Origin: Macrostomum lignano
Lineage: Eukaryota
DNA length: 64,000 nt
NCBI GenBank assembly: GCA_002269645.1
Contig: NIVC01000647.1
Coordinates: 62,001-126,000, forward strand
Reading direction: 5' to 3'
The notes below the pieces were generated by a model, which worked only from the letters and a program-made list of their open reading frames with translations, had not been told where the DNA came from and ran no database searches. Position 1 is the first letter of the stretch. Each line of letters starts with the position of its first letter. Made by a program: the position numbers and the translations under genes. Positions 677 to 54,700 of the stretch are shown here, in pieces.

Positions 677-2450
677 TCTAAATGTTTGAAAGACTGCCAG
701 AAATCATAGAACCGTGAGAAGCTCGTTTTTTTAAATCTCAATCCCCGATTCTTAATTCCCTTTCCCAGATAGGGCATATGGCAACTTTTGCGAGAAACTT
801 GAAAGACTGGGTCAGCTATCATTATTTCATTAAATTAATTCATGAATTAATTCATAAGACAGAGAGGAGAGCTTATGGCACCTTTTTCTAAATGTTTGAA
901 AGACTGCCAGCTATCATAGAACCGTGAGAAGCTCGTTTTTTAAATCTCAATCCCCGATTCTTAATTCCCTATCCCTGATTCCTAATGTTGGAATCCGAAT
1001 CCCCAATTCTTAATTCCCTATCCTTGATGCCTAATTCCTAAATCACGGCGCAACAAATGGCCGCTGCCAACAAGGAGGTTCCTTCGGGAGCTACCTTTGC
1101 GGCGAAGGCCAAGGCCAAAATCCCGGGAGTGATCATTCAAGGTCGCGACCAGGACTGGACCACTGGTCAGCTTCAAAAAGTGTGGAGTGCTATTGACTCC
1201 TATCTGATTGAGCTGACTGTCGAGGAGGGAATCTCCATCGGCATTGAGCGGATGGTGCTGCAAAGCAAATTCGTTCTTATTGCTCCTAGCAGTGAGGAGG
1301 ACGCTCAGCAGCTGCTCCAGCGCCTGCCGACGGTCTCCTTGGATGCTGACCTCGGCGGAGCTCTTTTTCTTCGCGAAGGCCAGCGTCCAAAGACGATACC
1401 CTATGTGGTTTTCGTCCCTGCTAAGAGCACCGCAGCTGGATCAGACGTTATCTGCCGGGTCCTACTGCGCCTGAATCCCGACCTCCCTGCTAGTGGACTG
1501 GTGTATCACCGCAAAGTCCGCAGGGGGGAGACGGGCAACTCAGTCAAGCCCCAGCGGCCTGGGACGAGGACGATTTGCTGTCCAAGTCTCCTTGATGGCC
1601 CGGGGCTCTAGCCAGACATTGCATTTAATACAGTAAGACTAAGCTCCACGTGTGTGGCCCGGGGAACAACCGCCCTAGAGAGGCTATCCTCGCTGCCAGC
1701 CATCTCCAGGCTTGGTTGAGGACTGATCTTTCAGATGGAGACCTCTGTATCATCCAATCTAACCATCTCTCATCTCTAACACAACTCTAACGCAAACCTC
1801 ATGCTCCGCAACCGCGGTAGCACTCCAGAAACTCCGCGGAAACTCAGGCGGAAGGCCAAAAGCCTTTACCGCCGTGCCATGAAGACCAGAAACCCGGAGG
1901 ACATGGAGATTTTCCGGCAAGCCTCCCGCAACTTCAAATCTGAAGTGCACAAGGCCAAGGAATGTAAATGGCGCCAATTTTGCAATGAATTGGAGCAAGA
2001 CAGACCTACTTCTAGGCTTGTCTAGGCCCTTTTTTATTAGCTTCTAAATGGCCGCTTCTCCAGGCACCAGTACCTGCAGGGCAACGCCACCAACGCCATC
2101 TGCAGTTTCTGTAACTCAGGTGACGAAACCGCTGAGCATTTCGTCAGCATCTGTCCCGCCTTTACGCGAGCCAGACTCACTTACCTCGGGCCACACACAT
2201 CTATTACTGAAGCGTGCAAACCCGAAAACTTTAATCAGCTCATGCGCTACCTCCGGGCCACCCGCAGGGCTGAACTCTCCTTTCCAGAGAGCACTATAGC
2301 TGCTGGCGACACTGAGGGACCTCCCTGGGCGGCGCCAACCCTTCGTCCATAGCGACGCGTCGGCAGTTCAGGGATTAGCGGAATGGGCGTTCGCGCCTTC
2401 CCGCTGTGTCCCTCCGGGACAGCCCTGCAGCTACGTCAAGTAAGTCAAGA
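677..2450 (+). mobile_element. Degenerate, internally deleted non-LTR retrotransposon (LINE; R1/LOA/I-group-like) lacking the RT domain
   Basis: Repetitive 5' region (about 85-bp direct repeat at about 677-761 and 887-970). Gag/ORF1-like ORF at 1057-1611. Frameshifted APE-endonuclease-like remnants at about 1590-1790 (PDIA(L)IQ, RPREAIL, DLSDGDLCII). Post-endonuclease linker at 1801-2025 (AKECKWRQFC). Then, in the same frame, the ORF2 C-terminal knuckle CSFCNSGDETAEHFVSIC (C-x2-C-x8-H-x4-C, 2101-2154), stop at 2352. Short TCAAG/TAAG tail at about 2435-2450. Clade assignment and 5' boundary are inference. Confidence 0.75.
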
Positions 2451-2679: not shown

Positions 2680-2870
2680 CTTTCAGCTCTCTCTTCTCTC
2701 TCCTCTCCTCTCCTTTCTCTTCTCGCCCCTCTCCCCTCCCTACCCTCCCCTCTCTCCCCTCTCTCCCCTCTTCTCTCTTCGTATGTTCTATCTTTTCTCT
2801 CATCCCATCTCTCGCATCTCCTCTCTTCTTTCATCTCTATCTTCTATCTCCTCTCCTTTCGACTCATATC
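2680..2870. repeat. CT-rich low-complexity tract
   Basis: Degenerate CTCTC/CTCCT runs; explains ORFs 2616..2935. Confidence 0.8.
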
Positions 2871-3162
2871 TAGCCCGCAGCCATGAACTAGATTCTAAAA
2901 AGTTTGCCGGACCCTTTGCTATAGAATCTTCGTAAAAACCTTGGATCCATCATCAGTACAGTCTGATTGTTACGTAAAGGCACACTATTGAAAAAGACAC
3001 AGTGATTATATTGCCTGTTGCCGCCAATCGTTGGTATAGTTGAGATGCAATGAAATTCTCTTCCCTTTATATTTGAGATCAAAATAAGATTTCATGCGAA
3101 CACTGTGTTAAACATGAGTTCAGTCCAGTAGCCAGTCCATTGTGCTGGCTCGGTGATTCAAT

Positions 3163-3488
3163 TCACTTCTCAGGCAGCTGGGGGATCGCAATCCGGACTC
3201 GCTCCTCGCTTCCCGCCGAACTGCCGCCCGAAGCTGGTGGTGGTCCTCCGCCTCCGGGCCGCGGGCCGCTGCCGCCGCCGCCGCCGCCGCCGCCGCTGCC
3301 GCCAGGTCCCCTGCTGCCGCCGCCGCTAGGAGCGGCAGGGGCCATCTGGAGCATGACGGCTGGAATTTGGATCGAGGGATTGTCAGGAAATTGGAACTGC
3401 AACAACTACAGAGCTTCATCACAGCTACCTTGGCAACTGGTAACTTACCCGCAATGACCAGCACAAGAGTGAGCTTGGCGAGTGTCAT
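3163..3488 (-). CDS. Small secreted Gly/Pro-rich protein, 78 aa, 2 exons
   Basis: Exons 3488-3449 and 3359-3163 with an 89-nt intron (G|GTAAGT ... TTCCAG|CC), 237 nt in total. Translation MTLAKLTLVLVIAAVMLQMAPAAPSGGGSRGPGG...EERVRIAIPQLPEK*. The splice joins two half signal peptides into one hydrophobic leader ending in A-P-A. Confidence 0.72.
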
Positions 3489-3879
3489 TTCTTTGCAATT
3501 TGACGCTCTGTTTTGACGTGTCGATAAAATTGTAGGGAGAACTATAGCTTGACTAAATCCGAAAAATAAAAAACCAAGTGTTATATAGCTCTGCCGCCAC
3601 CCACGCTTGAGCTGCCATCGATTTTATCAAAACTGGCTCAGCTCCAGCATGGGAATTCAATTTTAATCTTGCTAATCAGTCGAATGGTTTTAATGCTCGA
3701 TTAGCATTGCTAATCTGATTTCTGATCAGTTTAACATTATCGGGAGAAATCAAGCATATAATATTTCATATTTCATAGTTACTTGGGCAAGATTTCTTAG
3801 CTTTATGGCTTTAGTATTTTACTATAGGTAGACCTGTTCCACTTCTGCCTGCTTTGGGGCTGGCTGGCTGGTGTCCATG

Positions 3880-4110
3880 GGGTGTCTACTCTCCTGCGTC
3901 TGGGGTGTCTACTCTCCTGAGACTGGGGTGTCTACTCTCCTGAGACTGGGGTGTCTACTCTCCTGAGACTGGGGTGTCTACTCTCCTGAGTCCGAGGTGT
4001 TTACTCTCCTGAGTCCCGTGAGTGTCTACTCTCTGAGTCCCGTGAGTGTCTACTCTCCTGAGTCTAGGGTGTCTACTCTCCTGAGTCTAGGGTGTCTACT
4101 CTCCTGAGTC
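3880..4110. repeat. Minisatellite, about 23-bp unit GGGGTGTCTACTCTCCTGAGACT
   Basis: About 9-10 degenerate tandem copies between two divergent genes. Confidence 0.9.
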
Positions 4111-4752
4111 CAATTTCCTAAACTAGTTCGCTGCCCAAGTATGTAATGTTTATGCGTTACAAAAATGCAACACAGAAGCGCCTATTGCAGTCATTTACTG
4201 AGAATATTATTATAAAATTGCGCTCAGAAATTCTCGTTCTACACCGTAGCAAAGATCACCATAAAGACCCCAACGGAAATGAGTTCTCATGCCTAAACCT
4301 AGCCCCAGGCTAGGGCGTCGGCACCAAAAAACTCACAAAACGAGCGCAACGGGGCAGAGACGCTGAGCACACAGAGCCGCATTGGCCGGCTCTCCACTCT
4401 CCCCCCCCCCGCGCCCTCTGCACCGGAGAGCCGCTCGGCAGGAAGGCACACAGTAAGCAGGCCTTTCACCTCTGACACAGCGGCGGGCAGGAGGCAGGAA
4501 AAGCAACTCCGCAGTGGCTTTGCATTCTTTCATGCTGCAGTGCACAATTCAACCAACTCCAACGATGGCTGGGGGCACCGACCATCTCTCCCCAGTGAGA
4601 GGCCCTTACCAGAGCACCGTTCTCATAAGCTCTGACTTTTTTTCTCATCTCTGCACAAACATTCAATCGCAATAACTGCAGCCAAAAAAGCTCTCGAAAG
4701 ACGGCAGCAAATTTCGCGGCTCAAAGTTTTCATCGGCACAGGAGAGTCGATC

Positions 4753-7391
4753 ATGCCGCGGCCGCTGCAGCAGCTGCTGACTTTCATTTGCCTCGCCGCC
4801 GCGCTGCGAGAAACCGCCTTCGCTGCTGACTCGGCGAGAGCATCGGGCGGCAGCAAAGGCTCCGGCACCCCGGTGTACCCGGTGCTGTGCGATCCGACCA
4901 CGCAGGGCTGCATCAGGAGTCCCTACGGCTGCCGCAGCGTGCACTGGAGCGGCGCTGCGGCCCTCGGCTGCGACTTCCTGGCCACATGGCAACGCGCCGA
5001 AGACGGAGGCGGCGACATTGAGCTGGCTGTGAGCGGTCGGGTCGGCCTGGACGGCGGCTACATCGCCGCGGGATTCAAGCCTGGCAGGGGAGGGAGCGGT
5101 CAAGGTAAGAAGACGCACTGACCTGCTCTTCAGAACGAACGTCTGCCCTTCAGAACGGATGTCTGCCCTTCAGAACGAACGTCTGCCCTTCAAAACGAAC
5201 GTCTGCCCTTCAGAACGGGTGTCTGCCCTTCAGAACGGATGTCTGCTCTTCAGAACGAACGTCTGCCCTTCAGAACGGATGTCTGGCCTTCAGAAGGGAT
5301 ATCTGGCCTTCAGAAGGGATATCTACCCTTCAGAAGGGACGTCTGCCCTTCAGAAGAGACGTCTGCCCTTCATAACGGACGTCTGGCCTTCAGAAAGGAT
5401 ATCTGGCCTTCAGAAGGGATATCTGGCCTTCAAAAGGGATATCTGGCCTTCAGAAAGGATATCTACCCTTCAGAAGGGATATCTACCCTTCAGAAGGCAC
5501 TTCTGCCCTTCCTAAATGTTTCTGTTCTCTCAAAGGACGTCTGTCCTTGCGAATGGGTGTCTGTCTTTCCTACATGTAATAGGTCTGCCCCCCCCCCCCA
5601 CGAAGATGTGCCTGCCCTTCTGAAGGGGTGTCTGCCTGTCTTTCAGAAGGACGTCTATATCTAGTCTAGAAGGTGTCTACCCACCTAAAAGGTCTGTTCT
5701 CACAAATAACTTTCTGTTCTTCTGAAGAAGGGCCATCAGCCCTTATATCTATATTTGGAGAGTCTCAATCAGCCTTACTCAATTGCGACCCCGAACCCGA
5801 CCTTGCAGGCGTCCTGCTGGCCTGCTATAAGACGCCCACCGATTCCGGCGTCCACATGCGGCTGACTTCAGCCAGCAGCGGCTACTACTTCCTGCAGGCC
5901 TCCGAGGCCGACGATGTCAGCCTACTGACCGAGGCCGACAGCGCGCCGAAGTTCGGAGCGGACAGGCCGGAGCGGGCCGCCTACTTCTGGCCGGTGAGGG
6001 GGCAGGGCTACGCCACGCTCGAGTGCCGGGCCCGGCTGCGGCTCCAGCATCCAGCGCTGGACTGGCTTCATCATCCGGAGATCCTGGCCCATCCGGTTGG
6101 CATGCGACGGCCCGGCCGGAATCCGGTGGAATCGGACGGACTGGCCAAGCCAGACTGGCGCTACACCGGGCCGGCTCGGACACTGTCCGAGAGCGGAGAC
6201 TCGGTCGGGCCGGCCAGCACTGGCGGGGCCAAAGCGCACGGCTGCTTGATGGTGCTGGCCTGGGTTCTGTGCGCCTCCGTCGGCATGCTGTTGGCCAGGT
6301 GATTCATAGGGGAGAAGTCCGAAGATAGAGGATTACACTGCAGTGCCTGTGATCTTTGGGCGTCGTGAGAAATTCAATTTAGACCACCGAGTAAAGTAGC
6401 CGAACAAAGAGTTCAATCGTGCACACGGAAAACAGTTGGAGAGGACGGCGCGGCGGGAGCACTCGCTGCGGGAAAAGCTCGCGCAGGCAAACCTCGGCGG
6501 GAAAACTTCCTGCGGGAAAGTCTCATAGACTCCTCACATAATTGTACCAGAGATTAAGTTCAAAAAATTTTCACTCTACTCGCTAGTAGTGTAGCAAGCA
6601 GTAGTACGCTCGTAATCTAGCTCTCACACAGAGGGGTATCGCGCGCCTTCTACAATAAACGCCAATTCAGAGCAGTTCATCAACGCCATCCACCCCAAAA
6701 CTGCACCTAACCATGCAGGTACTACAAGACGCAATGGCCATCACGCCTGCTTGGCAAAGAGCTGGCCTGGTTCCAGGTGCACCGCGCCCTGATGGCCTCC
6801 TGCTGCATCCTCACACTCATCTCATTCATCGTGATCTTCGCCGATGTCGCGGGCTACAGCGCACTGGATGATCTACCGGACCTGGTCCACCCTGTGCTTG
6901 GCATCATCGTGACCATCTTGACCCTGGCTAACCCGCTCATCTCCCTCTGCCGCTGCCATCCCGACAGCGACAGGCGGCCGTGGTTCAACTGGACCCACTG
7001 GATAGTGGGCACCATTGCCTACATCCTAGCTGTAATCAACCTGTTTCTCGGCCTGCGCCTGGAACGCGCCGGAGCTCTTAAGACCATCGATTACCACATC
7101 TGGCTGCTGATCTTCTTCGTGCTACTGCAGTTCGTGATCGAAATCATTCTGGAGATTCACACCCTGTACCATTGGCGCCGGAACAAGCGGCGCTGGCGCC
7201 AGTACCAGCAGGACATGCTAGACTATCAGCAGCAGAGGCAGAAGGACGCCGGCACGCTGCAGAAGCCGCAGGCGCGTCCAACTGAGCCAAAGCCGGCTGG
7301 TTACTGTCTGAGAGCCTTCCTACTGGCGTTGCACGTTGTGGTGGCCACGGCAGTGTCAATCATGCTGGTTGTTGTCATCATCGTGTACTGA
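4753..7391 (+). CDS. FRRS1: DOMON + cytochrome b561 protein (ferric-chelate reductase 1-like), 504 aa, 3 exons
   Basis: Exons 4753-5104, 5809-6298 and 6719-7391, all GT-AG, 1515 nt, phases consistent. Signal peptide and DOMON-like segment (DIELAVSGRVGLDGGYIAAGF). b561 domain with four heme His motifs KAHG, FQVHR, LVHP and NWTHW. The junction gives LARYYK..WP, as in FRRS1. The symbol indicates family, not proven orthology. Confidence 0.85.
5125..5510. repeat. Intronic minisatellite, 20-bp unit GTCTGCCCTTCAGAACGAAC and variants
   Basis: About 19 copies starting about 20 nt after the donor at 5105. Confidence 0.92.
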
Positions 7392-8878: not shown

Positions 8879-11800
8879 TCAGTACTGATGGTTCTTCACG
8901 AACAGCGAGCTCTGGCCGGCGGCGCTGCCCATGCCGCCCTCGTACTTGCCCAGAGCGGCCAGCGAGTTGGCCCTGGCCCTCTTCAGCAGCTCGTCCTGTC
9001 CGGCCTTCACGTTCTCCTTCTTGCCACCCCAGGCCGCCAGCACAGAGGCCTGCAAGGCGCGGCCGTAGCTGAAGGTCAGGGCCCACGGCTTGCGGCCCGG
9101 GAACTTGTTGATAGCGTCCAGGTGGACCGTGGCGTCCTCCTCGCTCTGGCCGCCGCTCAGGAAGGTGATCCCGACAACGGCTGGCGGCACGCCGCGGCTC
9201 AGGGCCGTCACAGTGGCCTCAGCAACCTGCTGCGGGGTGTTGCGAACAGGGCAGGCCTGGCCGCAAGTGACCATGTTGGGCTTGAGCAGGGTGCCCTCCA
9301 GGTAGACGTGGTGATCAGCCAGAGCCTTGTAGGTGAAGGCCAGCACCTGCTCGGTGACCTTCTGAGCCGTGGCCAGGTCGTGATCGCCGTCCTGGAGTGC
9401 GGGAGCGGCGGTGTGAATGAGAAAGTCAAGATAGAAATTATGCGGAAGCTGTACGAACGACTGGCAAGATGGGTGAGGGAGATGTTAGCTAGGGTATAGA
9501 GGATTTGGAAGTTGGTCACTGAAATTGAGGATCTGGGTGGTTGGTCACTGAAATTGAAGATTTGGGAGGTTGGTCACTGAAATTGAGGATCTGGGTGGTT
9601 GGTCTCTGAAATTGAAGATTTGGGAGGCTGGTCACTGAAATTCAAGATCTGGGTGGTTGGTCACTGAAATTGAAGATTTGGGAGGTTGGTCACTGAAATT
9701 GAAGATTTGGGAGGTTGGTCACTGAAATTGAGGATCTGGGTGGTTGGTCACTGAAATTAAAGATTTGGGAGGTTGGTCACTGAAATTGAAGATTTGGGAG
9801 GTTGGTCACTGAAATTGAGGATCTGGGTGGTTGGTCACTGAAATTGAGGATCTGGGTGGTTGGTCACTGAAATTGAAGATTTGGAAGGTTGGTCACTGAA
9901 ATCGAGGATCTGGGTGGTTGGTCACTGAAATCGAGGATCTGGGTGGTTGGTCACTGAAATTGAAGATTTGGAAGGTTGGTCACTGAAATTGAGGATCTGG
10001 GTGGTTGGTGACTGAAACTGAGGATCTGGGAGGTTGGTCACTGAAACTGGGGATCTGGGAGGTTGGTCACTGAAACTGAGGATCTGGGAGGTTGGTCACT
10101 GAAATTGAGGATCTGGGAGGTTGGTCACTGAAATTGAGGATCTGGGAGGTTGGTCACTGAAATTGAGGATCTGGGAGGTTGGTGACCAAGATTCAGGTCT
10201 GGGAGATTGGTCACTGAAACTGAGGATCTGGGAGGTTGGTCCCAATTCTCACCTGCAGCACCTCCGGCTCAACAATGGGCACGAGACCATTCTGCTGGCA
10301 GATGGAAGCGTAACGAGCCAGCACGTTGGCGTTCTCCAGCATGGCCTGGTAGGACGGCGTGTTTGGCCCGATCTTCAGCACGCAGCGCCACTTGGCGAAC
10401 TGGGCGCCGTCTTTCTTGTACTGGGCGCAGCGCTCCGACAGGCCGTCCAAGCCCTGCAGTGTGTCGGGTTGGGCAGCCATTCTCTAGGGGCGATTCTTTA
10501 GGTGATGGATCTCTAAGTTGCGATTCTCTGAGCGGCGATTTTCTAAGAAGCGATTCTCTGAGTGGCGATTTTCTAAGAAGCGATTCTCTGAGTGGCGATT
10601 TTCTAAGAAGCGATTCTCTGAGTGGCGATTTTCTAAGAAGCGATTCTCTGAGTGGCGATTTTCTAAGAAGCGATTTTCTAAGAAGCGATTCTCTGAGTGG
10701 CGATTTTCTAAGAAGCGATTCTCTGAGTGGCGATTTTCTAAGAAGCGATTCTCTGAGTGGCGATTTTCTAAGAAGCGATTCTCTGAGTGGCGATTTTCTA
10801 AGAAGCGATTCTCTGAGTGGCGATTTTCTAAGAAGCGATTCTCTGAGCGGCGATTTTCTAAGAAGCGATTCTCTGAGTGGCGATTTTCTAAGAAGCGATT
10901 CTCTGAGTGGCGATTTTCTAAGAAGAAATGATCTAAGTGGCGATTCACAAAAGGAAATCAATAGGGCGAAAGAAACCAGGGCCAATTAACTTCATCAATA
11001 ACAGACTCTCCAAGGCCCTCACCTGGGTGGTGCACTCGTCATGCGAGCCGGCCAGCGGCACGACGCCCTTGTCCACCTTGATCCCGGGAATGATGCCGCG
11101 CTTCTGCAGCACCTGCGGGAACGGAGTGCCACAGTCGGCCTTCTGGTAGAAGGTCTCGTGGAACAGAATCACGCCGGAGATATAGTTGGACACTTCGGCA
11201 TCGGCGGTGAACAGCAGCTGACGGTACAGGCGCCTGTTCTCTTCGGTGTTCTCAACGTTGATGCCCTGGAAGCGCTTGGCGCAGGTGCCTTGGCGAATAG
11301 GATAAATTGACAGGTTGGAACAATTTATGATTTATGAGTTGATTACATTCTGCGTAATACACATTAGGCATGTTGGTGTTAACCCCTCCCTGATTCTTCA
11401 GTGGGTACTGCTACTCAGTCATCAGGTATTTCATTAGGTACTGCTACTCAGTCATCAGGTATTTCATTAGGTACTGCTACTCACTCATCAGGTATTTCAT
11501 TAGGTACTGCTACTCACTCATCAGGTATTTCATCCCCACTTCTCATCCACTATTCATGCTCTTCAAGCACCAATGCTTATGCTGTGCGGTTCCATTTAAT
11601 TCCAGTCTTGCCCAAAGCTTTAGCCTATCCATATTAAAAGTACAAAGGGACGGAAATGCTAATGCATCCGAAGCCCGTTTGGTCCCGTTCCAGTACAAAT
11701 AATGGACACAAACAACACCAGACCAACTTGTGTGTTTATAGAAAAAATGTAACTTCTAATACATATAGAAGTTAACGCACAATTCATACTACTGACTACT

Positions 11801-13237
11801 AGCTGGAAATGTAATAAACTGACTGGAATGCTATACCTAGATTGCACTGTACTTTGATACTCTTTAAGGCACCCTTGCCCAACACAAACGCTCGCACAGG
11901 CTCTCTCTGTCTCTCTCTCTCTCCCCTTCTCGTCTCGCTCGGAAGGAGATCAATAAAAACCAGTCGAAGCCTGCCGACCCGTCTGGCGCAGAAGTGTACA
12001 CTCCTGCTGTACACCTTCCCCTGCGCCCGTCTAGCACTACAGAAAGAGACTGGAATCTCGCGCAGAGGGGAGAGAGAGAGGAAAGGAGGCTAAGAGTGCG
12101 TATGGGGTCAAAATACAAGCCCAGATACGGAGGACGCTTCTCTAATCTAGCCAACGGTCTTTCTGACTATACTTGTAGATGGAGTGAGCCGTTACTATAT
12201 GCTAAGTTCACTGGAAGGTCAATTAAACTTATAAACAGACTTTTCACTAATATCTAAACTAAACAAAGTAGTACAGGCACAGCGTGCTAAATGAACTTTG
12301 AAGAGTAAAAAACAATGGAATTTTGAGCGAGTCACAGAAAAGCAAACAAATGACTTAATATTCGATAAAACAAGTTTCTTTTCAAAACACAAAACTTTAT
12401 GGATTGAAACATTTCCGAACTTAAATTAAAACAGGACTGAAATTAATAAGTTCCACTGTTTGAAAATACAGCTATGACCCTCATAGAAAAGACAGCGATG
12501 GCTCTCATTGGGAATACAGCTGACTCTCATTGGGAAGACAGCTATGAGTCTCATTGGAAAGACAGCTGACTCTCATTGGAAAGACAGCTATGACTCTCAT
12601 TGGGAAGACAGCTATGACTCTCATTGGAAAGACAGCTATGACTCTCATTGGGAAGACAGCAGACTCATTGGAAAGACAGATGACTCTCATTGGGAAGACA
12701 GCTATGACCCTCATTGGAAAGACAGCTATGACTCTCATTGGGAAGACAGCAATGACTCTCATTGGGAAGAAAGCTATGACTCTCATTGGAAAGACAGCTA
12801 TGACTCTCATTGAGAAGACAGCAATGACTCTCATTGGAAAGACAGCTATGACCCTCATTGGAAAGACAGCAATGACTCATTGGAAAGACAGCTATGACTC
12901 TCATAGGAAAGACAGCTATGACCCTCATTGGAAAGATAGCAATGACTCATTAGAAAGACAGATATGACTCTTATTGGGAAGACAGCAATGACCCTCATTG
13001 GGAAGACAGCTATGACCCTCATTGAGAAAACAACCTTGAACATCATCAAAAAGACAGCTATAAAAGTACAGTGACCAAAATTAAAAAGACAAAATGAGCA
13101 CTCCTAAAATGCAACTAAAGCTTACCAGTGCTTTCATCAGCAGCCAAAATGCCTTTGCCAGGAGCAGCAATAGCATTGGCAATATCGCGCAGCTCCTTCT
13201 GCTTCTCAGCACTCAGATATTCAGCATAGGAAGGCAT
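8879..13237 (-). CDS. ALDO: Class I fructose-bisphosphate aldolase, 363 aa, 4 exons
   Basis: Exons 13237-13126, 11288-11023, 10453-10253 and 9391-8879, 1092 nt, canonical splice sites. Motifs [48 protein letters not shown] (Schiff-base Lys), [18 protein letters not shown] and C-terminal Tyr. Confidence 0.98.
9510..10240. repeat. Intronic minisatellite, 29-bp unit GAGGATCTGGGAGGTTGGTCACTGAAATT
   Basis: About 25 copies filling most of aldolase intron 3. Confidence 0.95.
10505..10945. repeat. Intronic minisatellite, 30-bp unit (15-bp dimer) GCGATTCTCTGAGTGGCGATTTTCTAAGAA
   Basis: About 14 copies in aldolase intron 2. Confidence 0.95.
11403..11530. repeat. Minisatellite, 33-bp unit GGTACTGCTACTCAGTCATCAGGTATTTCATTA
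   Basis: About 4 copies in aldolase intron 1. Confidence 0.9.
12470..13030. repeat. Intronic minisatellite, 24-bp unit ATGACTCTCATTGGAAAGACAGCT
   Basis: About 23 copies in aldolase intron 1. Confidence 0.95.
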
Positions 13238-17294: not shown

Positions 17295-24804
<7,510 letters not shown>

Positions 24805-30300: not shown

Positions 30301-33300
30301 GCACCAACATCAGCACCAGCACCAGCACCAGCGCCTGGCCGAGCTGGTGCCAGCTGGAGAGGCCGGAGCGGTCATCGAAGGCGACGACATCGAACTGTTC
30401 GCGGCTGACGACGACGACGACAGTTTGGCGCCGAGCGACGCCGAGACGGAGCGAAGTGTCCGAGTTCTGAGGCCGGTGTCCACCCAGCAGCAGTTTGACG
30501 ATCGACACGGCGGTCGGCTGGTTCGACAGCCGCTGCTGCACCGGCTGCGGGACAGGCTGAAGTCGGCCAAGACCGGCTGTCCACCCGATCGGGGGCGCCT
30601 GTGCGGAGCTCTCGTGCAGCTGCTGCCGTTTTTGGGCATCATGCGAGAGTACAACCTGCGGGAGTGGCTGCTGCCCGACCTCATCTCGGGTGAGCCCAGC
30701 TGAGGCCGGAGGGTTGAAGGTTCAACGGGTTTCACTTCCAATGGGTCTATGAGTCAGTAGGTTGACGATTGAGTCAGTAGGTTGATGAATGAGTCAGTAG
30801 GTTGACGAGTGAGTCAGTAGGTTGATGAGTGAGTCAGTAGGTTGATGAATGAGTCAGTAGGTTGATGATTGAGTCAGTAGGTTGATGAATGAGTCAGTAG
30901 GTTGATGAATGAGTCAGTAGGTTGATGAATGAGTCAGTAGGTTGATGAATGAGTGAGTAGGTTGATGAATGAGTCAGTAGGTTGATGAATGAGTCAGTAG
31001 GTTGATGATTGAGTCAGTAGGTTGATGAATGAGTCAGTAGGTTGATGAATGAGTCAGTAGGTTGATGAATGAGTCAGTAGGTTGATGAATGAGTGAGTAG
31101 GTTGATGAATGAGTCAGTAGGTTGATGAATGAGTCAGTAGGTTGATGATTGAGTCAGTAGGTTGATGAATGAGTCAGTAGGTTGATGAGTGAGTCAGTAG
31201 GTTGATGAATGAGTCAGTAGGTTGATGATTGAGTCAGTAGGTTGATGAATGAGTCAGTAGGTTGATGAATGAGTCAGTAGGTTGATGAATGAGTCAGTAG
31301 GTTGATGAGTGAGTCAGTAGGTTGATGAATGAGTCAGTAGGTTGATGATTGAGTCAGTAGGTTGATGATTGATGAAAGAGTCAATACTTTTTTTCCATTA
31401 TTATTCTCATGAGCTCGGATTACTCAATATTACAGTAAAAACGAATGCCTGCATAAAACAGTTCGTACGCTTCACTTCATCAGAATAAAACGCAACTTGC
31501 ATGACTAACAAACCACGTCGTACAATGGCTTAGTTGATTTAAAACAAATGAATTTCTGCTTTCAAGTCAGTTTGCAGTACTGTATTCTTCCTATTGCAAC
31601 AAATTTTCACCTGATTAATTACGCGCGTAAGATTTCATGCTCAGTGGATCAAAATTTTGGCCTGATTATTACACACCTTATTTTATCCGGATTTCGCTCG
31701 AGAGACCTATGTACATTGGCTGTGACGGCTGGGGGCAGAGATGTATTGCCTAACTGAAAGCCTACTGCAATGTACATTGGCTGTGACGGCTGGGGGCAGA
31801 GATGTAATGGTTAACTGAAAGGCTCCTGCAAAGTACATTGGCTGTGACGGCTGGGGGCAGAGATGTATTGCCTAACTGAAAGCCTACTGCAATGTACATT
31901 GGCTGTGACGGCTGGGGGCAGAGATGAAATGGTTAACTGAAAGGCTCCTGCAATGTACATTGGCTGTGACGGCTGGGGGCAGAGATGTATTGGCTAACTG
32001 AAAGGCTCCTGCAATGTACATTGGCTGTGACGGCTGGGGCAGAGATTTAATGGCTAACTGAAAGGCCCCTGCTTATTTCAAACTTTTGCACACCCTTACT
32101 GAGCAAAACATTCTCAATCCACGATTTTTTCAGGCCTGACGGTGGGAATCATGCACATCCCCCAGGGCATGGCGTACGCCTTCCTGGCCGAGCTGCCGCC
32201 CTACCTGGGCCTGTACACCTCCTTCTTCCCTCCTCTGATCTACTTCTTCTTCGGCACATCGCGCCAGATCTCCATGGGCACCTTGGCGATCGTCTCTCTG
32301 CTGATTGGCAGTCTGGTCAGGAAGAACCTGCCGGCGGTTGCTATGCAGGTGACCCCAGCTGGCGATAATGTGACTGCGGAAGCTTTCATAGTCAATGCCA
32401 CCTCGATGGCGACTGACCAGTCGTGGGGATCAGACCCGCTGATACGGAGCAGAGTCTCTCTGGCCTGCGCCACCTGTCTGTGCGTGGGGCTTATTCAGGT
32501 GAGAGATGCGGCAGGTTGGACTTTGATCCCCAGTTGCTGGGCCATGCAGCCTCCCAGATCCCCAGTTGCTGAGCCAGCCTCCCAGACTCTCAGTTGCTAG
32601 GCCAGCCTCCCAGATCATCAGTTGCTAGGCCAGCCTCCCAGATCATCAGTTGCTGGGCCAGCCTCCCATATCCTCAGTTGCTGGGTTTTTTTTGACGCGC
32701 AACTGTCGCCAATTCTCCCAACAACCAGCTGCTCATGGGCATCTTGCGACTCGGGTTTCTAACTCGGTACCTGAGCGACCCGCTAATCTCCGGGTTCACC
32801 ATGGGCGTCGCGGTGCACGTGTTCAGCAGCCAGATCAAGTACGTGCTGGGCATCAGTGTGCCCGGCAGGAATGGCCTGGCCAGTTTGCCCCTGGTGAGTC
32901 TGGGCTTTCATTGAGAATGAGCAGTGAATAGAATGCAAAGCACCCACTGACCTCTCCGGATCGCCAGCACTACTACGATCTGGCCTGCAACATTGGTCAG
33001 ACCAATTTTGTCACCCTGGGCATCGCGGCCGTTGCCGTAGTGATCCTGTACGTCACCAAGGAATTCGTTAATCCGCGAGTTCGCAAGAAGATTAAAGCGC
33101 CTCTGCCGACCGAACTGATCATTGTAAGAATCCGAGTGCTTGCTCAAACAGCTGTCTTTTTTATGCAAATTTTCTCATGTCTGACTTAATCTCTACCAGG
33201 TAACTCTTGGGACAGTGATCTCTTATGCGTTCGATCTTAAGAAGAATTACAACGTTAAAATCGTTGGCACCATTCCGACTGGGTAAGGATGCCGATAGAT

Positions 33301-37550: not shown

Positions 37551-39664
37551 TCAGTCACCCATGCAGCATCCCAGGCTGCCAGCCTTCCGGGTTCTTTCGA
37601 ACGCGTCCGTGTGCTTGTTGTGGTTGACGATCTCCCATTTCTTCATCCACGGACCGGAGATCACTGCGCTGAACTCATCAGCTGCGGATTCGTCCCTGGC
37701 CATGGACTCCAGCTGGGCTCTGTTCCGGTCCACAGAGTCGAAGCTGTCCCAGTCTGGCCGGAAGTCCGGCTCCCCGTCGCGGCGCACCTCACAGGTGGGC
37801 TTGAGGCCGAACAAGCCAGCCGGGGTGCCCGTGCGCTGCCAGCGGAAGTCGATGGACCAGCGCACCACGTCCGAGCGGTTGTTGAGGCTCCGGTGCGGTG
37901 TGAAGTTGTTGAACAGCAGGAAAGAGCCGTACGGCACGTCAAGAGTCACGGGGTCCTTGGCCATGTCCACGCCAAACTCCTTCTCGATGATGTCCTCGTC
38001 CAGGTCAATGTACCAGGTGGGCCCGGCGCAGCAGGTGTGCTTGGCGATGTAGCCGTCCCGGTGGCAGCCCGGCACCATCTGCAGGGTGCCGTTCTGCTCG
38101 TTAGTGTCCAGCAGTGGCACCCAGGCGGTGACGATAAGCGTGTTGTAGGACTCCACGTCGAAGTAGCCGCTGTCCTGATGCCAGGGAACCGTGCTGGCGG
38201 CGTTGTTTGGCGTCTTGGTGCGCAGGTTCCACACCGGGTTGAAAGAGATGTTCGGGCCGACGATGTCCTCGAGGAGGTTCAGCATTCGCTCGTGAGCGGC
38301 AATGGCCCGGAACGAGGGCGGCAAGGTGGACAGTTTGTGAAGCACTATGTTGGCACCGGGGAAGTCACGCTCGATGGCGCAAAGGCGGTGGTAGAATCCG
38401 AGGCCCTCGTGCTTGTCTGGCGTGAAGTTTTCAGTGTTAAGTCAGTAAAGTAAAAAATAATTAGCTAGAATATGTGCCGCATGGTGCAGTGCTACATCTC
38501 AGAAAGTGTCGAATTCAATGAGCTCTGTTCTTACTGACATCACGCTTAAATTAAGCTCAGATATTACATTACTGACATAGTGTTTACACCAAGCTTTGAT
38601 CTTGCTGACATCATGTTAACACCAAGCTCTAATATTTACTGACATCGTGTTTACACCAAGCACTGTTCTTACTGATATCGTGTTTGCCCCAAGCTCTGAT
38701 CTTTACTGACATCGCATTTGCACCAAGCTCTGATTTTTACTGACATCGCATTTGCACCAAGCTCTGATCTTTACTGACATCGCATTTGCACCAAGCTCTG
38801 ATCTTTACTGACATCGCATTTGCACCAAGCTCTGATCTTTACTGACATCGCATTTGCACCAAGCTCAGATCTTGCTGACATCGTGATAACACCAAGCTTT
38901 GATCTTATACTGACATTGCGTTTGCCCCAAGCTCTGATCTTACTGACATTGCGTTTACACCAAGCTCTGATCTTTACTGACATTGCGTTCGCCTCAAGCT
39001 CTGATCTTACTGACATTGCGTCTGCACCAAGCTCTGATCTTACTGACATTGCGTTTGCCCCAAGCTCTGATCTTACTGACATTGCGTTTGCACCAAGCTC
39101 TGATCTCGCTGACATCGTGTTTACACCAAGCTCTGATCTTTACTTACATTGCGTTTGCACCAAGCTCTGATCTTACTGACATCGTGTTTACACCAAGCTC
39201 TTACTGACGTACCAGCAGCTTCAAGCCAGCACTCACAGTTCACCACATCTTACTGACGCCAAGCCCTCAAGACTGGAATTTCCGGGCCCGTCCGCATGGC
39301 GACCTTACTATTTTGGTGAAGTACGTTGGCACAGACCTTGTGTGATTTAGACTCAAAAGGGACAGTCACGAGAGCACAGAAGTCAGGGCAATATAAAGTC
39401 ACATAATTAACAATCACCTTTGATCTTGCCGGCATTATACAGTTTATCCGCCAGCTCAGAGACTTTCACCGTAATGTCAGCTTTAACAGCGTCCAGCTCC
39501 TCTTTGGCGAAGAAGTCTCGCACCAGGGTGAAGCCTCGAGTGTAGAATTCGTCCAGCTGTGCCCGACTCAGCTGGCCCGGCTTGTTGCCTTTGGCCGGCC
39601 GCTCCTTGAACAGCTCGGGGTGCCGCTCGCCAGTGTAGCCTGGATTGGAGGCGCTGCTCGTCAT
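37551..39664 (-). CDS. PhyH-family 2-oxoglutarate/Fe(II) dioxygenase (phytanoyl-CoA dioxygenase domain), 370 aa, 2 exons
   Basis: Exons 39664-39418 and 38416-37551, 1113 nt, phase 1. N-terminal LSRAQLDEFYTRGFTLVRDFF; HxD motif VPWHQDSGY; AWVPLLD..EQNGTLQMVPGCH; distal His/Arg in TPHRSLNNRSDVVRWSIDFRW. Confidence 0.92.
38560..39205. repeat. Intronic 33-34-bp minisatellite ACTGACATCGCATTTGCACCAAGCTCTGATCTTT
   Basis: About 19 copies in the PhyH intron. Confidence 0.94.
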
Positions 39665-42432: not shown

Positions 42433-43913
42433 CTAAGTGAGCCAAACCGAGCCATCATCTCTCAGCGCCAGTAGGCCGGATGTCCGATTTGCCAGGCGTT
42501 TGCGAATCTCATTGGCTGGCTTTGCGTCCGCTGGAATGGGCTGAAACCGGGCGCACAGCTGCCCTAGCCAGCCGGTTGGTACGTAGCCGTCTTCAGCCGA
42601 CACCGGCACCACCAGTTTCATCATGTCGGCGGCTCGCTCCGCGTGCATCCGGCACGAGTTCGTCTCCTTGAACCGGCGCGACAGACAGACAACTACTAGG
42701 CGACATGAGTCAACAGCGTCGCGCGTTGCTCGAAGACTGTCAGTTAGCGATGCAGCATCCTTGAAGTCGACCCACACGCTGACGCCCAATTGAAGCAGAT
42801 CTTCCCGCAGCTTGCGCACGAAGTCCTTCTGCTCAGTGTGGTAGGTCAACACGACATCAGCACTTGACTGCGACGGCTTCGGCTCCGACGGAGCCCCGCT
42901 GATGCTTGTGACGCTGGCCTCTTCTTTTTCTGATCCGCGGATTCGTCCAGTGCAGCGAACGCCCGGCTGCTGGGCCCGAGCACCTTCATCGTGAACTTCT
43001 CGCCCATGTTGAACAGCAGTCCTTGCAGCGTCTGCGACATCTCCCAGTCCTTGGCGGTGGCCAGACGCCTCAGACAGTCGCAGATCTCGGCACCCATGGC
43101 CAGCTTCAGCTGCCGGTCCTTCTCAAACGACAGAGTGAACGCAAGCTCGAGCCCGGCGCCGACGTCCTGCGACTCGGCGGCCTCCAGCATCGCCTTGACG
43201 GCCGGCAGCACGCCGAGCTTCATCAGCAGGGCCTTGTTGACATCGTTGAGGGCGAGGCGCTGCGTGCACCTGGCCAGCTCCGGCAGGCTGTACACCATGT
43301 TGCCAGTCTCGAAGCTCCGCTCGCTGCAGCTCAGCGACGCCCGGAGGCCGTCCACCAGGTGCCCGATGATGTCGCTCTCGCCGAGGAACAGATCCGCCTG
43401 GCTCTCATCCAGCGCGAATGCCATCAGCAGCAGCGCCTGCAGGGACCTCGCTGGCTCCGGCGACTTCAGCAGAGGCCGCACCGGCCCGACCAGGTCGAAC
43501 TTGGCCAGGTTGGAGTTCACGAAGCTGTCATTCTTGAACAGGCAGTTGTACATGATGGTGACCAGCTGGAACATGAGGTTGGAGCACAGGTCGCTCAGCT
43601 TCCCGCCGAGGTACTCCGGGCTCCATGACTTCAGCATGTCGCAGAAGACGCCGCTGACGAAGCCCTCCGAGGTGGCCAGCAACTGGCAGAACTCCGTGGA
43701 CTCGTCGCTCCGATCCTGGATGCGGCTGAGCAGCGAGCCCAGCATCCGCTGCTCCATCCGGCGCTGCTTCCCCGTTGACGGATCGGCAAACTTTGAGTCC
43801 CGGTTTCGGCGGTACACGTGCTCGGCCAGCGCCAGGGCGTTTGGCGCCGCCTCCCGCACCAGCGACTCGCTGAGCGACTCCAGCTCTTCCTCGCTGCGAG
43901 AGCTTCTGTACAT
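42433..43913 (-). CDS. ARM-like repeat + C-terminal TIR (TIR_2) protein, split by an apparent 1-nt frameshift (assembly error, pseudogene or recoding)
   Basis: ORF 43913-42846 is helical and ARM-like (LALNDVNKALLMKLGVLP, LAFTLSFEKD, LQGLLFNM). An overlapping -1 frame, open from about 43100 to 42433, carries a linker then ADVVLTY...VRKLREDL..LGVSVWVD...AVDSCRLVVVCLSRRFKETNSCRMHAERA...VVPV...GWLG, a TIR_2 signature. Adding one base at the T5 run (42925-42929) gives a single 493-aa ORF. Confidence 0.8.
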
Positions 43914-47479: not shown

Positions 47480-49704
<2,225 letters not shown>

Positions 49705-49940
49705 TTAATAATTTGTCATTATTTTGGTCTTTAGTCACTCACTTTGTCTGTTTAGTTCTGAATAGAATGGAGTCCGAATGGAGTTTTGCCATAGACAAAT
49801 TCTGTAGAAAAAAACTCGATTTTAGTGCACTTAGCGACATGAAGAATATATATAGTAAGTTCCTCACCGGCCTTCAGCTCATTTCTAAGAATATCGAGTA
49901 CGGCTTCCCTCTACTTCAGCTGTCCATGGGCAGCTTGTGC

Positions 49941-50456
<516 letters not shown>

Positions 50457-50914
50457 GATTGCGAGCTCCATTTAAGTAAACAATAAGAAAGGCTTTTAAG
50501 TTTCCAAATTCACTGTCAACCAGAGTGAAACTCAAAAAGTACCATTTTTTATTTTATTGATTTTTTAAATGGAGGACAACGGTTATAAGTTTAAGTTCGG
50601 AAGAATATTATTGTAGTAATTTGTAATCCTTCTAACAGTTTTTCCACCACTCAATGACACCAATCTTATAAGTGTCAGTACAATATCACATGTAGGCTTA
50701 AGGGAAGCAAAGTCAATGCAATCCTGCTAATTTTCGTTTCCATTACTTTCAAACGCAGATTGACCAGGGATCTGGACACACGATAAGTAGCGAACTCATT
50801 TCTACGTGTGTGACACTTGAGAGCATTGATAATGGGGGCTGGGGTTTACTCTCGAGAGAAGTAAAACGCTACAAGCTCTGCTTCGCATTTGATTGCTCAC
50901 ACTTTCATCCCTAT

Positions 50915-51729: not shown

Positions 51730-54700
51730 TCAGTTGGTCATGACTTCCGCTCCCTCGGGTATGGCGAACTCCTCGGGAATTTCTAAAGCCGCCCCCGCCG
51801 CGGCCCCGTTCAACTCCAGCTGCTCCTCGTCGTCGAAGTCGGCAGCGGCGCCGCTGGCAGCCGACTGAAGCGACGCGGCCGATGAAGAGCTCGGCATCGG
51901 AGGCGGCGCAGCGGCCGGCTGCTGCAGTCGACCCTCTCTGTGCGCGACGATGTTCGGATGAGGCAGGTGGCCGCTCGGATGGGCGGCCTCGACGTACTTC
52001 GCCACGTACTCGGCGCAGCCGCGCGGATCGTGCTCGTCTGGCGCTTCGCCCGGCGCCGATCCGCGCCAAAACTGGCGCTGCCTGGGCAGGTGCTTCCGGC
52101 TGCGATTGAGCCGCATCTCCTCGAGCAGCCAGTCGGCCAGGTCGGCCGGGAACCAGGCCTCGAAGGTGTCACGAATTTTCGACTTGCCCCGCAGCATCTT
52201 CATCTTGGCGGCGGTGGCCGGGTGCAGGAAGCGCTGGATTGCGCACCAGACGCCGTGGAAGAGGCCGCTGTGATTGACGCAGAACACCTTGCCGAGACGC
52301 TCCGGGTAGAAGTTGCTGAACACCTGCGTGACTGAGTAGCCGAGGCGCGGGTTGCAGGCAGGCAGGCTGATGCCTGCGGGCGAGTTGAGGATGGCACTGA
52401 CGGGACTGAGGGGATGGCACTGACGGGACTGAGGGGATGGCACTGACGGGACTGAGGGGATGGCACTGACGGGACTGAGGGGATGGCACTGACGGGACTG
52501 AGGGGATGGCACTGACGGGACTGAGGGGATGGCACTGACGGGACTGAGGGGATGGCACTGACGGGACTGAGGGGATGGCACTGACGGGACTGAGGGGATG
52601 GCACTGACGGGACTGAGGGGATGGCACTGACGGGACTGAGGGGATGGCACTGACGGGACTGAGGGGATGGCACTGACGGGACTGAGGGGATGGCACTGAC
52701 GGGACTGAGGGGATGGCACTGACGGGACTGAGGGGATGGCACTGACGGGACTGAGGGGAATGGCACTGACGGGACTGAAGGGAAGGCACTGACGGGACTG
52801 AGGGGATGGCACTGACGGGACTGAAGGGATGGCACTGACGGGACTGAGGGGATGGCACTGACGGGACTGAGGGGATGGCACTGACGGGACTGAGGGGATG
52901 GCACTGACGGGACTGAGGGGGATGGCACTGACGGGACTGAAGGGATGGCACTGACGGGACTGAGGGGATGGCACTGACGGGACTGAAGGGATGGCACTGA
53001 CGGGACTGAGGGGATGGCACTGACGGGACTGAGGGGGATGGCACTGAGCGGGACTGAGAGGGACTGAGGGGGAATGGCACTGAGCGGGACTGAAGGGGAA
53101 TGGCACTGAGCGGGACTGAAGGGGAATGGCACTGAGTGGGACTGAAGGGATGGCACTGAGCGAGACTGAGAGGGACTGAGGGGGGAATGGCACTGAGCGG
53201 GACTGAAGGGGAATGGCACTGAGCGGGACTGAAGGGGAATGGCACTGAGCGGGACTGAGGGGGATGGCACTGAGCGGGACTGACTGGGAATGGCACTGAG
53301 CGAGACTGAGGGGGATGGCACTGAGCGGGACTGAGAGGGACTGAGGGGGGATGGCACTGAGTGGGACTGAGGGGGAATGGCACTGAGTGGGACTGAGGGG
53401 GAATGGCACTGAGTGGGACTGAGGGGGAATGGCACTGAGTGGGACTGAGGGGGGATGTCACTGAGCGGGACTGAGGGGGGATGGCACTGAGGGGGAATGG
53501 CACTGAGGGGGAATGGCACTGAGGGGGAATGGCACTGAGCGGGACTGAGGGGAATGGCACTGAGTGGGACTGAGGGGGGATGGCACTGAGCGGGACTGAA
53601 GGGGGAATGGCACTGAGTGGGACTGACTGGGAATGGCACTGAGCGAGACTGAGGGGGATGGCACTGAGCGGGACTGACTGGGAATGGCACTGAGCGAGAC
53701 TGAGGGGGATGGCACTGAGCGGGACTGAGAGGGACTGAGGGGGAATGGCACTGAGTGGGACTGAGGGGGAATGGCACTGAGTGGGACTGAGGGGGAATGG
53801 CACTGAGCGGGACTGAGGGGGGATGTCACTGAGTGGGACTGAGGGGGGATGGCACTGAGCGGGACTGAGGGGGAATGGCACTGAGGGGGAATGGCACTGA
53901 GTGGGACTGAGGGGAATGGCACTGAGTGGGACTGAGGGGGGATGGCACTGAGCGGGACTGAGGGGGAATGGCACTGAGTGGGACTGAGGGGGGATGTCAC
54001 TGAGTGGGACTGAGGGGGATGGCACTGAGTGGGACTGAGGGGGGATGGCACTGAACGGGACTGAGGGGGAATGGCACTGAGTGGGACTGAGGGGGGATGG
54101 CACTGAGCGGGACTGAGGGGGATGTCACTGAGTGGGACTGAGAGGGATGTCACTGAGTGGGACTGAGGGGGATGGCACTGAGTGGGACTGAGGGGGAATG
54201 GCACTGAGTGGGACTGAGGGGGAATGGCACTGAGTGGGACTGAGGGGGAATGGCACTGAGTGGGACTGAGAGGGGATGGCACTGAGTGGGACTGAGGGGG
54301 ATGGCACTGAGTGGGACTGAGGGGGAATGGCACTGAGTGGGACTGAGGGGGGATGGCACTGAGTGGGACTGAGGGGGGATGTCACTGAGCGGGACTGAGG
54401 GGGGATGGCACTGAGTGGGACTGAGAGGGGATGGCACTGAGTGGGACTGAGGGGGATGGCACTGAGTGGGACTGAGGGGGAATGGCACTGAGTGGTACTG
54501 AGGGGGGATGGCACTGAGTGGGACTGAGGGGGATGTCACCGAGTGGGACTGAGGGGGATGTTACTGAGTGGGCCTGAGGGGGGATGGCACTGAGCGGGAC
54601 TGAGGGGGAATGGCACGGAGCGGGACTGAGGGGAATTGTCAAAGTTTGATTTCAATTCGCAGAAGTGATTGCTCTATAGTGGATTTTAATGGAGCAGAAT

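What the first reader, a model, noticed from the sequence alone, without database searches (positions are those of the whole stretch)
3163..3488. Hidden two-exon gene for a 78-aa secreted glycine-rich peptide
Seen: no ORF in the track gives this product. Removing an 89-nt intron with strong sites (GTAAGT, TTCCAG) produces a clean signal peptide, MTLAKLTLVLVIAAVMLQMAPA. It is followed by a Cys-free Gly/Pro/Ser tract and a charged tail, EERVRIAIPQLPEK. Inference: a possibly lineage-specific antimicrobial, cuticle/adhesive or signalling peptide that annotation pipelines would probably miss. I recognise no family.
Basis: partly seen in the sequence, partly recalled or inferred. Interest (0 to 1): 0.7.

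Follow-up and report, generated by a model that had tools for sequence, protein, structure and literature searches.

The report
Annotated flatworm glycine-rich secreted peptide gene
The two-exon gene is real, but it is not hidden: it is already in GenBank as an uncharacterised 'hypothetical protein' of the flatworm Macrostomum lignano, it has two near-identical sister copies, and its function is still unknown.

Summary
It is not a missed gene. The window is Macrostomum lignano contig NIVC01000647.1, and GenBank has this locus as PAA79185.1 (BOX15_Mlig019159g3, "partial", 121 aa) with exactly this intron. That annotation was built only from RNA-seq and transcript assemblies. The extra 43 residues are 5'UTR read-through. 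Two paralogous loci with the same neighbours (GDPD, peptide gene, cytochrome b561, aldolase) carry 76-residue gene models. The only GT..AG solution for them uses the same ATG and the same 89-nt intron, with two fewer Gly codons. No homologue was found among 1.84 billion representative proteins, and there is no Pfam match, so it is an orphan. The N-terminus fits a cleavable signal peptide by rule of thumb. The mature part of about 55 aa is basic, free of Cys and aromatic residues, and 39% Gly. Antimicrobial, adhesive and signalling roles remain untested. Neuropeptide, collagen and eggshell-protein criteria are not met. Interest is low.

The parts
3581..3587 (-). TATATAA, a candidate TATA box 93-99 nt upstream of the ATG
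   Evidence: pattern scan. It is identical in all three paralogous copies. It is only a candidate, because the annotated model starts upstream of it, at 3617.
3489..3617 (-). 5' UTR, annotated in GenBank as the first 43 codons of a '5'-partial' CDS
   Evidence: P0004 starts WQLKRGW..., which is the translation from 3617. In the genome, in-frame TGA TAA stops lie at 3629..3624 and there is no ATG before 3488. In both paralogues a 4-nt insertion puts a stop 21 codons upstream of the ATG, and their gene calls start at that ATG.
3449..3488 (-). Coding exon 1 (40 nt): Met1 to the first base of codon 14; first part of the signal peptide
   Evidence: It is identical in all three copies. There is a purine (G) at -3 relative to the ATG (read).
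3360..3448 (-). Intron of 89 nt, phase 1, GTAAGT...TTCCAG
   Evidence: The GenBank gene range of 455 nt equals 366 nt of CDS plus 89 nt. An intron of the same length and with the same splice sites is the only solution for the L003 and L004 gene calls. One substitution is seen among the three copies.
3163..3359 (-). Coding exon 2 (197 nt, including the TGA at 3165..3163): rest of the signal peptide, the Gly/Pro/Ser tract and the tail EERVRIAIPQLPEK
3334..3359 (-). Exon 2 part of the predicted 22-aa signal peptide (cleavage after APA22, or alternatively after APS25)
   Evidence: Rule-of-thumb reading only. K5 lies in the n-region. The h-region LTLVLVIAAVML has a mean Kyte-Doolittle value of 3.09. 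Ala sits at -3 and -1. No SignalP-type tool was available.
3265..3303 (-). (GGC)n trinucleotide repeat that encodes the poly-Gly core; its length differs between copies
   Evidence: TRF reports period 3 with 13 copies. The window copy has 6 nt (two Gly codons) more than both paralogues.
3068..3073 (-). AATATA(AA), a candidate poly(A) signal about 90 nt after the stop codon
   Evidence: It is conserved in the three copies. The actual 3' end of the transcript was not seen.

Best explanation
[quoted passage not shown] GenBank already has it as BOX15_Mlig019159g3 (PAA79185.1). It is one of three near-identical copies produced by that species' recent polyploidy. Shown: the gene structure; transcript-derived gene models with an 89-nt intron at this locus and at two syntenic paralogous loci; and the absence of detectable homologues. 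Inferred: translation starts at Met 3488. The first ~22 residues act as a cleavable ER signal peptide, with a phase-1 intron inside it. A basic 53-56-aa polypeptide (pI about 10.7, 4.6-4.8 kDa) is released into the secretory pathway. It is rich in Gly, Pro and Ser, lacks Cys and aromatic residues, and is probably disordered. The length of its poly-Gly core drifts through GGC-repeat slippage. My best guess at its role is a taxon-restricted gland or epidermal secretory product, for example a component of mucus, matrix or seminal fluid. I think a processed hormone or a classical antimicrobial peptide is less likely. This guess rests on composition alone and is weak (about 0.3).
For: The window ORF 42846..43913(-) is an exact M. 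lignano protein. The 78-aa query matches P0004 at 100% identity over 100% of its length; P0004 is PAA79185.1, 'hypothetical protein BOX15_Mlig019159g3, partial'. That gene lies on NIVC01000647.1, and its 455-nt range equals 366 coding nt plus 89. The Mlig_3_7 GenBank annotation derives only from RNA-seq (STAR, StringTie, TACO) and a de novo transcriptome, with ORFs called by TransDecoder (PMC5730564). Paralogous loci L003 8033..8352(-) and L004 7184..7503(-) carry 76-residue gene calls in the same order: GDPD, peptide gene, cytochrome b561; aldolase follows in the window locus and in L003. The only GT..AG solution for those calls uses the same ATG and the same 89-nt intron. The only two exonic substitutions among the copies are synonymous in the spliced frame, and the indel is in frame. 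No ATG lies between the in-frame upstream stops and Met 3488. Three subgenomes have been reported for M. lignano (PMC10733133). The leader has a strongly hydrophobic 12-residue core and A-x-A before the proposed cleavage site. Orphan status.
Against: I saw no RNA-seq reads, ribosome profiling or peptide evidence directly. Transcript support is inferred from how the annotation was made. Reads were allowed to multi-map, so expression of this particular copy is not shown. The three copies are about 98% identical in their flanks as well, so the lower divergence of the CDS is not significant (2/231 against 14/633 variable sites, Fisher p=0.26). The GGC-rich region is open in several frames and on both strands, so an ORF there is weak evidence on its own. 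No orthologue from another species could be examined. The reconstructed 76-aa paralogue product is not in the protein collection, even though 76-residue genes are listed at both loci. No signal-peptide predictor was available. The annotated 5' end (3617) lies upstream of the candidate TATA box.
Confidence: 0.72

Rival explanations
1. The transcript is real and spliced but is not translated into a functional peptide. It would be a young or non-coding transcript whose 78-codon ORF exists because a GC-rich trinucleotide repeat stays open by chance.
For: There is no homologue anywhere and no Pfam match. More than half of the ORF is low-complexity GGC-repeat sequence. The same stretch is open in other frames and on the opposite strand (122 aa unspliced, 105 aa on the + strand). 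There is no significant sign of purifying selection. TransDecoder ORF calls are not evidence of translation.
Against: The ORF begins with a well-formed signal peptide right at the first possible ATG, with a purine at -3. The ORF, its start, its stop and both splice sites are intact in all three copies. Both exonic substitutions are silent in this frame and the indel is in frame.
Confidence: 0.15
2. The main product is the unspliced (intron-retaining) 122-aa ORF 3488..3120(-). It starts with the same 13 residues and continues into a Cys-rich and poly-Ala sequence.
For: This frame is open from the same ATG through the intron. The 6-nt indel is in frame here too.
Against: The window gene model removes the intron. 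The paralogue gene ranges also require an 89-nt intron. Both exonic substitutions in L004 are non-synonymous in this frame (Ala>Val and Ala>Glu, read). A further L004 substitution (window 3132) turns TGG into TGA and shortens this frame. There is no family match.
Confidence: 0.04
3. The hydrophobic N-terminus is an uncleaved signal anchor, so the product is a small type II membrane protein with an extracellular Gly-rich tail, not a secreted peptide.
For: Cleavage was not tested. Pro at -2 and at +2 around the proposed A22|A23 site is not ideal.
Against: The hydrophobic core has only about 12-15 residues (mean hydropathy falls from 3.09 over 12 residues to 2.02 over 19). That is short for a membrane span and typical of a cleavable signal peptide. 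It is followed by small residues that fit the -3/-1 rule at two possible sites.
Confidence: 0.06

Closest known systems
GenBank PAA79185.1 (BOX15_Mlig019159g3) and the 76-residue gene calls at the two paralogous M. lignano loci (NIVC01002079.1, NIVC01000328.1)
   Same: The paralogue gene ranges are explained only by the same ATG and intron, and their products differ by two Gly.
   Different: The GenBank entry carries a spurious 43-aa N-terminal extension because the 5'UTR of this copy happens to be open in frame. No function, expression pattern or publication is attached to it.
Caenorhabditis elegans NLP-29/CNC (caenacin) glycine-rich secreted peptides (recalled from memory, not tested here)
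   Same: They are small secreted products of roughly similar size, with a signal peptide followed by a Gly-dominated, Cys-free, cationic mature part, and they are taxon-restricted.
   Different: Those peptides are built of Gly-Tyr or Gly-aromatic repeats and are induced by infection. This peptide has no aromatic residue at all, shows no sequence similarity, and nothing is known about whether it is induced.
Arthropod and plant glycine-rich secreted proteins (acanthoscurrin/ctenidin-type antimicrobial peptides; class I plant GRPs) (from memory)
   Same: A signal peptide plus a (G)n/GGX low-complexity domain, with a basic net charge.
   Different: There is no homology. Those proteins are typically longer, have regular GGX repeats and contain Tyr, His or Leu. 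Here the repeat is a plain poly-Gly run interrupted by Ser, Pro and Arg, followed by a unique charged tail.
Flatworm eggshell precursor proteins (schistosome p14/p48 type, Gly/Tyr-rich) (from memory)
   Same: They are flatworm secreted proteins with very high Gly content.
   Different: Eggshell precursors depend on abundant Tyr for quinone tanning. This peptide has no Tyr. The identifier was not found in the held germline gene lists (those files may be incomplete).

Membership tests
Classical secretory protein with a cleavable N-terminal signal peptide | Positively charged n-region, a hydrophobic h-region of 7-15 residues, and a c-region with small neutral residues at -3 and -1 | tested here: met
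   K5; h-region LTLVLVIAAVML with mean hydropathy 3.09; A20-P21-A22|A23, or alternatively A23-P24-S25|G26. This is a rule-of-thumb reading, because no trained predictor was available.
Classical secretory protein with a cleavable N-terminal signal peptide | Demonstrated cleavage and secretion | not testable with these tools
   This needs SignalP or Phobius and an expression or secretome experiment.
Neuropeptide / prohormone precursor | Dibasic (KR/RR/KK) or furin-type processing sites flanking the peptides, often with a C-terminal Gly as amidation donor | tested here: not met
   The sequence has no KR, RR, RK or KK and no G[KR][KR]. It has only single Arg residues (SRG, PRP, ERVRI).
Neuropeptide / prohormone precursor | Conserved mature peptide motif shared with known flatworm npp/spp families | tested here: not met
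   No homologue in 1.84 billion representatives or in the word-indexed 5.8 billion proteins. No Pfam hit.
Glycine-rich antimicrobial peptides (caenacin/NLP, acanthoscurrin type) | Secreted, Gly-rich, net cationic mature peptide | tested here: met
   The mature part is 39% Gly with pI 10.7. Its net charge is about +2 (4 Arg, 1 Lys, 3 Glu, counted).
Glycine-rich antimicrobial peptides (caenacin/NLP, acanthoscurrin type) | Aromatic or His residues interspersed in the Gly repeats; sequence relatedness to a known family | tested here: not met
   No Y, F, W or H. No similarity to anything.
Glycine-rich antimicrobial peptides (caenacin/NLP, acanthoscurrin type) | Antimicrobial activity or induction by infection | not testable with these tools
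   This needs an assay of the synthetic peptide and expression data.
Collagen-like proteins | Uninterrupted Gly-X-Y triplet periodicity | tested here: not met
   The tract consists of runs of consecutive Gly (GGGGGGGG, GGGG) with no G-X-Y periodicity.
Flatworm eggshell precursors (Gly/Tyr-rich) | High Tyr content for cross-linking | tested here: not met
   No Tyr.
M. lignano adhesive-organ proteins (Mlig-ap1/ap2; PMC6410801) | Listed among adhesive or tail-specific transcripts; sequence related to the ap1/ap2 proteins | tested here: inconclusive
   Mlig019159 is absent from the four held supplementary files of PMC6410801, but stored files can be truncated. The 78-aa product has no detectable relative other than its own locus.

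The most novel reading that the evidence does not exclude
Mlig019159 is a Macrostomum-specific, possibly de novo-born secreted peptide with a real biological role, for example as a seminal-fluid, gland-secretion or epithelial-defence component. Its poly-Gly length would vary between subgenomes through repeat slippage. It would then be a compact, triplicated orphan effector that can be studied in a flatworm where transgenesis and RNAi are available.
Probability: 0.25. Interest if true: 0.35.

Novelty: already known. Interest (0 to 1): 0.15.

Why it matters
It matters little beyond housekeeping. It also allows a small correction to the public record. PAA79185.1 should be a complete 78-aa protein starting at Met 44 of the deposited sequence, not a 5'-partial 121-aa one. 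Small secreted orphan proteins are of general interest in Macrostomum, for example in work on seminal fluid, adhesion and rapidly evolving reproductive genes. Nothing found here ties this gene to any of those roles.

Tried and rejected
(1) Exact look-up of the 78-aa, 122-aa, 63-aa and 60-aa products found none of them in the collection. The gene appeared only as the 121-aa 'partial' form.

(2) I first tried to reach paralogous loci with the C-terminal exon of the cytochrome b561 neighbour. The full-length protein worked later.

I reached the paralogues through cluster members instead.

(4) A cross-species synteny test was not possible. The best non-lignano relative of the cytochrome b561 neighbour is a 1.6-kb Logan transcript contig (SRR28338164) with no genomic flank.

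(5) A literature search for 'Mlig019159' found no main-text hit. It found no hit in the held supplements of PMC5816591, PMC7336406, PMC6410801, PMC12896417, PMC12732829 or PMC5946080. At least one of those files was cut when stored, so absence is not informative.

(6) A selection test on the three copies has no power (p=0.26).

(7) Rfam found nothing in the window. Pfam found nothing for either candidate product.

(8) Local tblastn found no further copy in the window or in the fetched loci.

(9) I did not run structure prediction. A single low-complexity sequence without an alignment would give an uninterpretable low-confidence model.

Full report
**What is in the sequence.** The feature lies on the minus strand.
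- ATG at 3488..3486.
- Exon 1 at 3488..3449 (40 nt).
- Intron at 3448..3360 (89 nt, GTAAGT…TTCCAG, phase 1).
- Exon 2 at 3359..3163, ending in TGA.

Joined, the exons encode the 78-aa product MTLAKLTLVLVIAAVMLQMAPAAPSGGGSRGPGGSGGGGGGGGSGPRPGGGGPPPASGGSSAGSEERVRIAIPQLPEK. No contiguous ORF gives this product. That ORF is a formal rival.

**Where the window comes from.** A single-exon ORF at 42846..43913(-) is an exact match to a protein in a cluster named from Macrostomum lignano (TIR-domain protein). The locus itself maps to contig NIVC01000647.1 of assembly GCA_002269645.1, Mlig_3_7. The window is therefore genomic DNA of this free-living flatworm. The many minisatellites and short introns fit that origin.

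**The gene is already annotated.**
- A search with the 78-aa product returned one hit, P0004, at 100% identity over the whole query. It is [quoted passage not shown], accession PAA79185.1, 121 aa.
- Its gene range is 455 nt, which equals 366 coding nt plus 89. It corresponds to window 3617..3163(-).
- The GenBank annotation of Mlig_3_7 was not predicted ab initio. It is a genome-guided transcriptome built from STAR-mapped RNA-seq assembled with StringTie, merged by TACO with the de novo assembly MLRNA150904. Trans-splicing and poly(A) evidence were used to cut it into genes, and ORFs were called by TransDecoder (PMC5730564).
- The intron therefore rests on transcript evidence, although I could not inspect reads myself.

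**Why the entry is called 'partial'.** The extra 43 N-terminal residues (WQLKRGW…NCKE) are the 5'UTR read in frame. In the genome, in-frame stops TGA TAA lie at 3629..3624, just upstream of the model's first base. No ATG occurs before 3488. In the two paralogues a 4-nt insertion in the 5'UTR shifts the upstream frame and places a stop 21 codons before the ATG. Their gene calls start at that ATG. The true product of the window copy is therefore the 78-aa protein, and 'partial' is an artefact.

**Paralogues.**
- I reconstructed the neighbouring aldolase and cytochrome b561/DOMON proteins and looked up their clusters. This led to two further contigs.
- The gene order GDPD, small gene, cytochrome b561 is the same at both paralogous loci. 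Aldolase follows in the window locus and in L003; L004 did not show it within the fetched flank.
- L003 8033..8352(-) on NIVC01002079.1 and L004 7184..7503(-) on NIVC01000328.1 each carry a gene call of 76 residues in 320 nt, which is 231 coding nt plus 89.
- The only GT..AG solution starts at the same ATG, removes an 89-nt GTAAGT…TTCCAG intron and gives the same protein with two fewer Gly.
- Three copies fit the annotation's naming rule, in which a shared prefix means at least 95% transcript identity. They also fit the three subgenomes reported for this neopolyploid (PMC10733133).
- Over about 860 aligned columns the copies differ at 2 of 231 coding sites and at 14 of 633 non-coding sites. 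Both coding changes are third positions of Gly codons and silent in the spliced frame. The difference between coding and non-coding is not significant (Fisher p=0.26).
- The paralogues therefore confirm the gene structure but cannot prove selection on the protein.
- One loose end remains. The reconstructed 76-aa sequence is not in the protein collection, although the gene tables list 76-residue products.

**Relatives and family.** phmmer against 1.84 billion representative proteins found only the locus's own product. The word-indexed search of 5.8 billion proteins gave the same result. Pfam gave nothing above noise for the spliced or the unspliced product. There is one copy per locus and no other copy in the window. 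The collection does hold transcript-derived proteins of related species: the cytochrome b561 neighbour has a 75%-identical Logan hit. Short ORFs may be under-represented there, so 'orphan' is the best current description, not a proven fact.

**What the product looks like.**
- The leader has a Lys at position 5 and a 12-residue core, LTLVLVIAAVML, with mean hydropathy 3.09. It ends in small residues that fit the -3/-1 rule, at APA22|A or alternatively at APS25|G (and my reading). The core is too short for a typical membrane span.
- The phase-1 intron sits inside the signal-peptide coding region. From memory, this arrangement is common for secreted proteins.
- The mature part is 53-56 aa, about 4.6-4.8 kDa, with pI 10.7. 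It is 39% Gly, 16% Pro and 14% Ser, with no Cys, Tyr, Phe, Trp or His.
- The poly-Gly core is a (GGC)n microsatellite whose length differs between copies.
- It has no dibasic sites, no amidation motif, no Gly-X-Y periodicity and no Tyr. It therefore fails the defining features of prohormones, collagens and flatworm eggshell precursors.
- It shares only composition and charge with glycine-rich antimicrobial peptides.

**Most likely mechanism.** The protein is probably targeted co-translationally to the ER by the N-terminal signal peptide. The signal peptide is then cleaved, and a short, basic, disordered Gly/Pro/Ser-rich polypeptide is secreted. I favour a gland or epithelial secretory product over a processed signalling peptide, but only composition supports this guess. 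The transcript and the splice are effectively shown through the annotation. Translation, cleavage, secretion and function are inferred.

**Literature.** 'Mlig019159' occurs in no main text of the library. It also occurs in none of the held supplements of six M. lignano papers that cover neoblast and germline genes, cross-species orthogroups, adhesion, ploidy, intestine and ageing. At least one of those files was truncated on storage, so this is weak negative evidence.

**Verdict.** It is wrong on the main selling point, because the gene is not hidden and has been public as a transcript-based model since 2017. Function remains unknown and none of the proposed roles is supported. The finding is ordinary, so I score its interest low.

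Noticed in passing
window 3617..3489 (-); GenBank PAA79185.1: The deposited protein is flagged 5'-partial and carries 43 spurious N-terminal residues translated from the 5'UTR. Genomic in-frame stops at 3629..3624 and the paralogue gene calls that start at the ATG show that the product is a complete 78-aa protein.
   Followed up: yes
window 3878..4111 and 2688..2855: A 23-nt minisatellite (about 10 copies) lies in the 1.1-kb divergent intergenic region between the peptide gene and the cytochrome b561 gene. A CT/AG-rich simple repeat lies about 300 nt downstream of the peptide gene. The upstream repeat seems to be present in the paralogues too (repetitive translations).
   Followed up: partly
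window 10207-10989, 19018-19482, 22271-22987, 27578-29198, 34666-35517, 44888-45735, 46121-47173, 49885-50535, 50889-51786, 51730-54333, 55267-56060, 56530-57675: The window is packed with long minisatellite arrays that produce many long, overlapping, multi-frame ORFs of 150-640 aa. These are almost certainly not genes, and they would mislead a naive ORF track.
   Followed up: no
window 51730..53409 (-): A 559-aa ORF joins a genuine CRAL/TRIO-domain exon (Pfam, E=7e-10) in frame to about 400 aa of minisatellite-encoded Pro/Ser/Gln/Cys-rich repeat. The paralogous CRAL_TRIO gene product is only 353 aa, so the repeat is probably intronic or non-coding.
   Followed up: partly
window 47480..48535 (+): An ORF with a DXD glycosyltransferase sugar-binding region (PF04488, E=1e-11) runs in frame into a (GRQA)n repeat. 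A related fragment (…[14 protein letters not shown]…) reappears at 49937..50458, next to another repeat, which suggests a repeat-disrupted or duplicated exon.
   Followed up: no
window 42846..43913 (-): The protein in this window copy is 355 aa, while the other two members of its cluster are 493 and 509 aa and carry a TIR_2 domain. The 355-aa ORF itself gives no Pfam hit, so this copy may be truncated or mis-modelled.
   Followed up: partly
window 1057..1611 (+): A 184-aa ATG ORF with no Pfam hit. It is not in the protein collection and not annotated as a gene. Its nature is unknown.
   Followed up: partly
window 17295..18194 (-), 32142..32600 (+), 37551..38345 (-), 4753..7391 (+), 8879..13237 (-): Other genes in the window: a rhodopsin-type GPCR exon, an SLC26 sulfate-permease exon, a PhyH dioxygenase exon, a cytochrome b561 protein (PAA79186.1) and fructose-bisphosphate aldolase (363 aa, the same sequence on three contigs).
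   Followed up: partly
tool behaviour:: A 204-aa exon of the cytochrome b561 protein found nothing in the word-indexed search, although the full-length protein retrieved its own cluster. The 76-aa paralogue product is listed as a called gene but is absent from the protein collection. Short or partial queries can therefore be missed, which weakens the 'no homologue' result for a 78-aa peptide.
   Followed up: no
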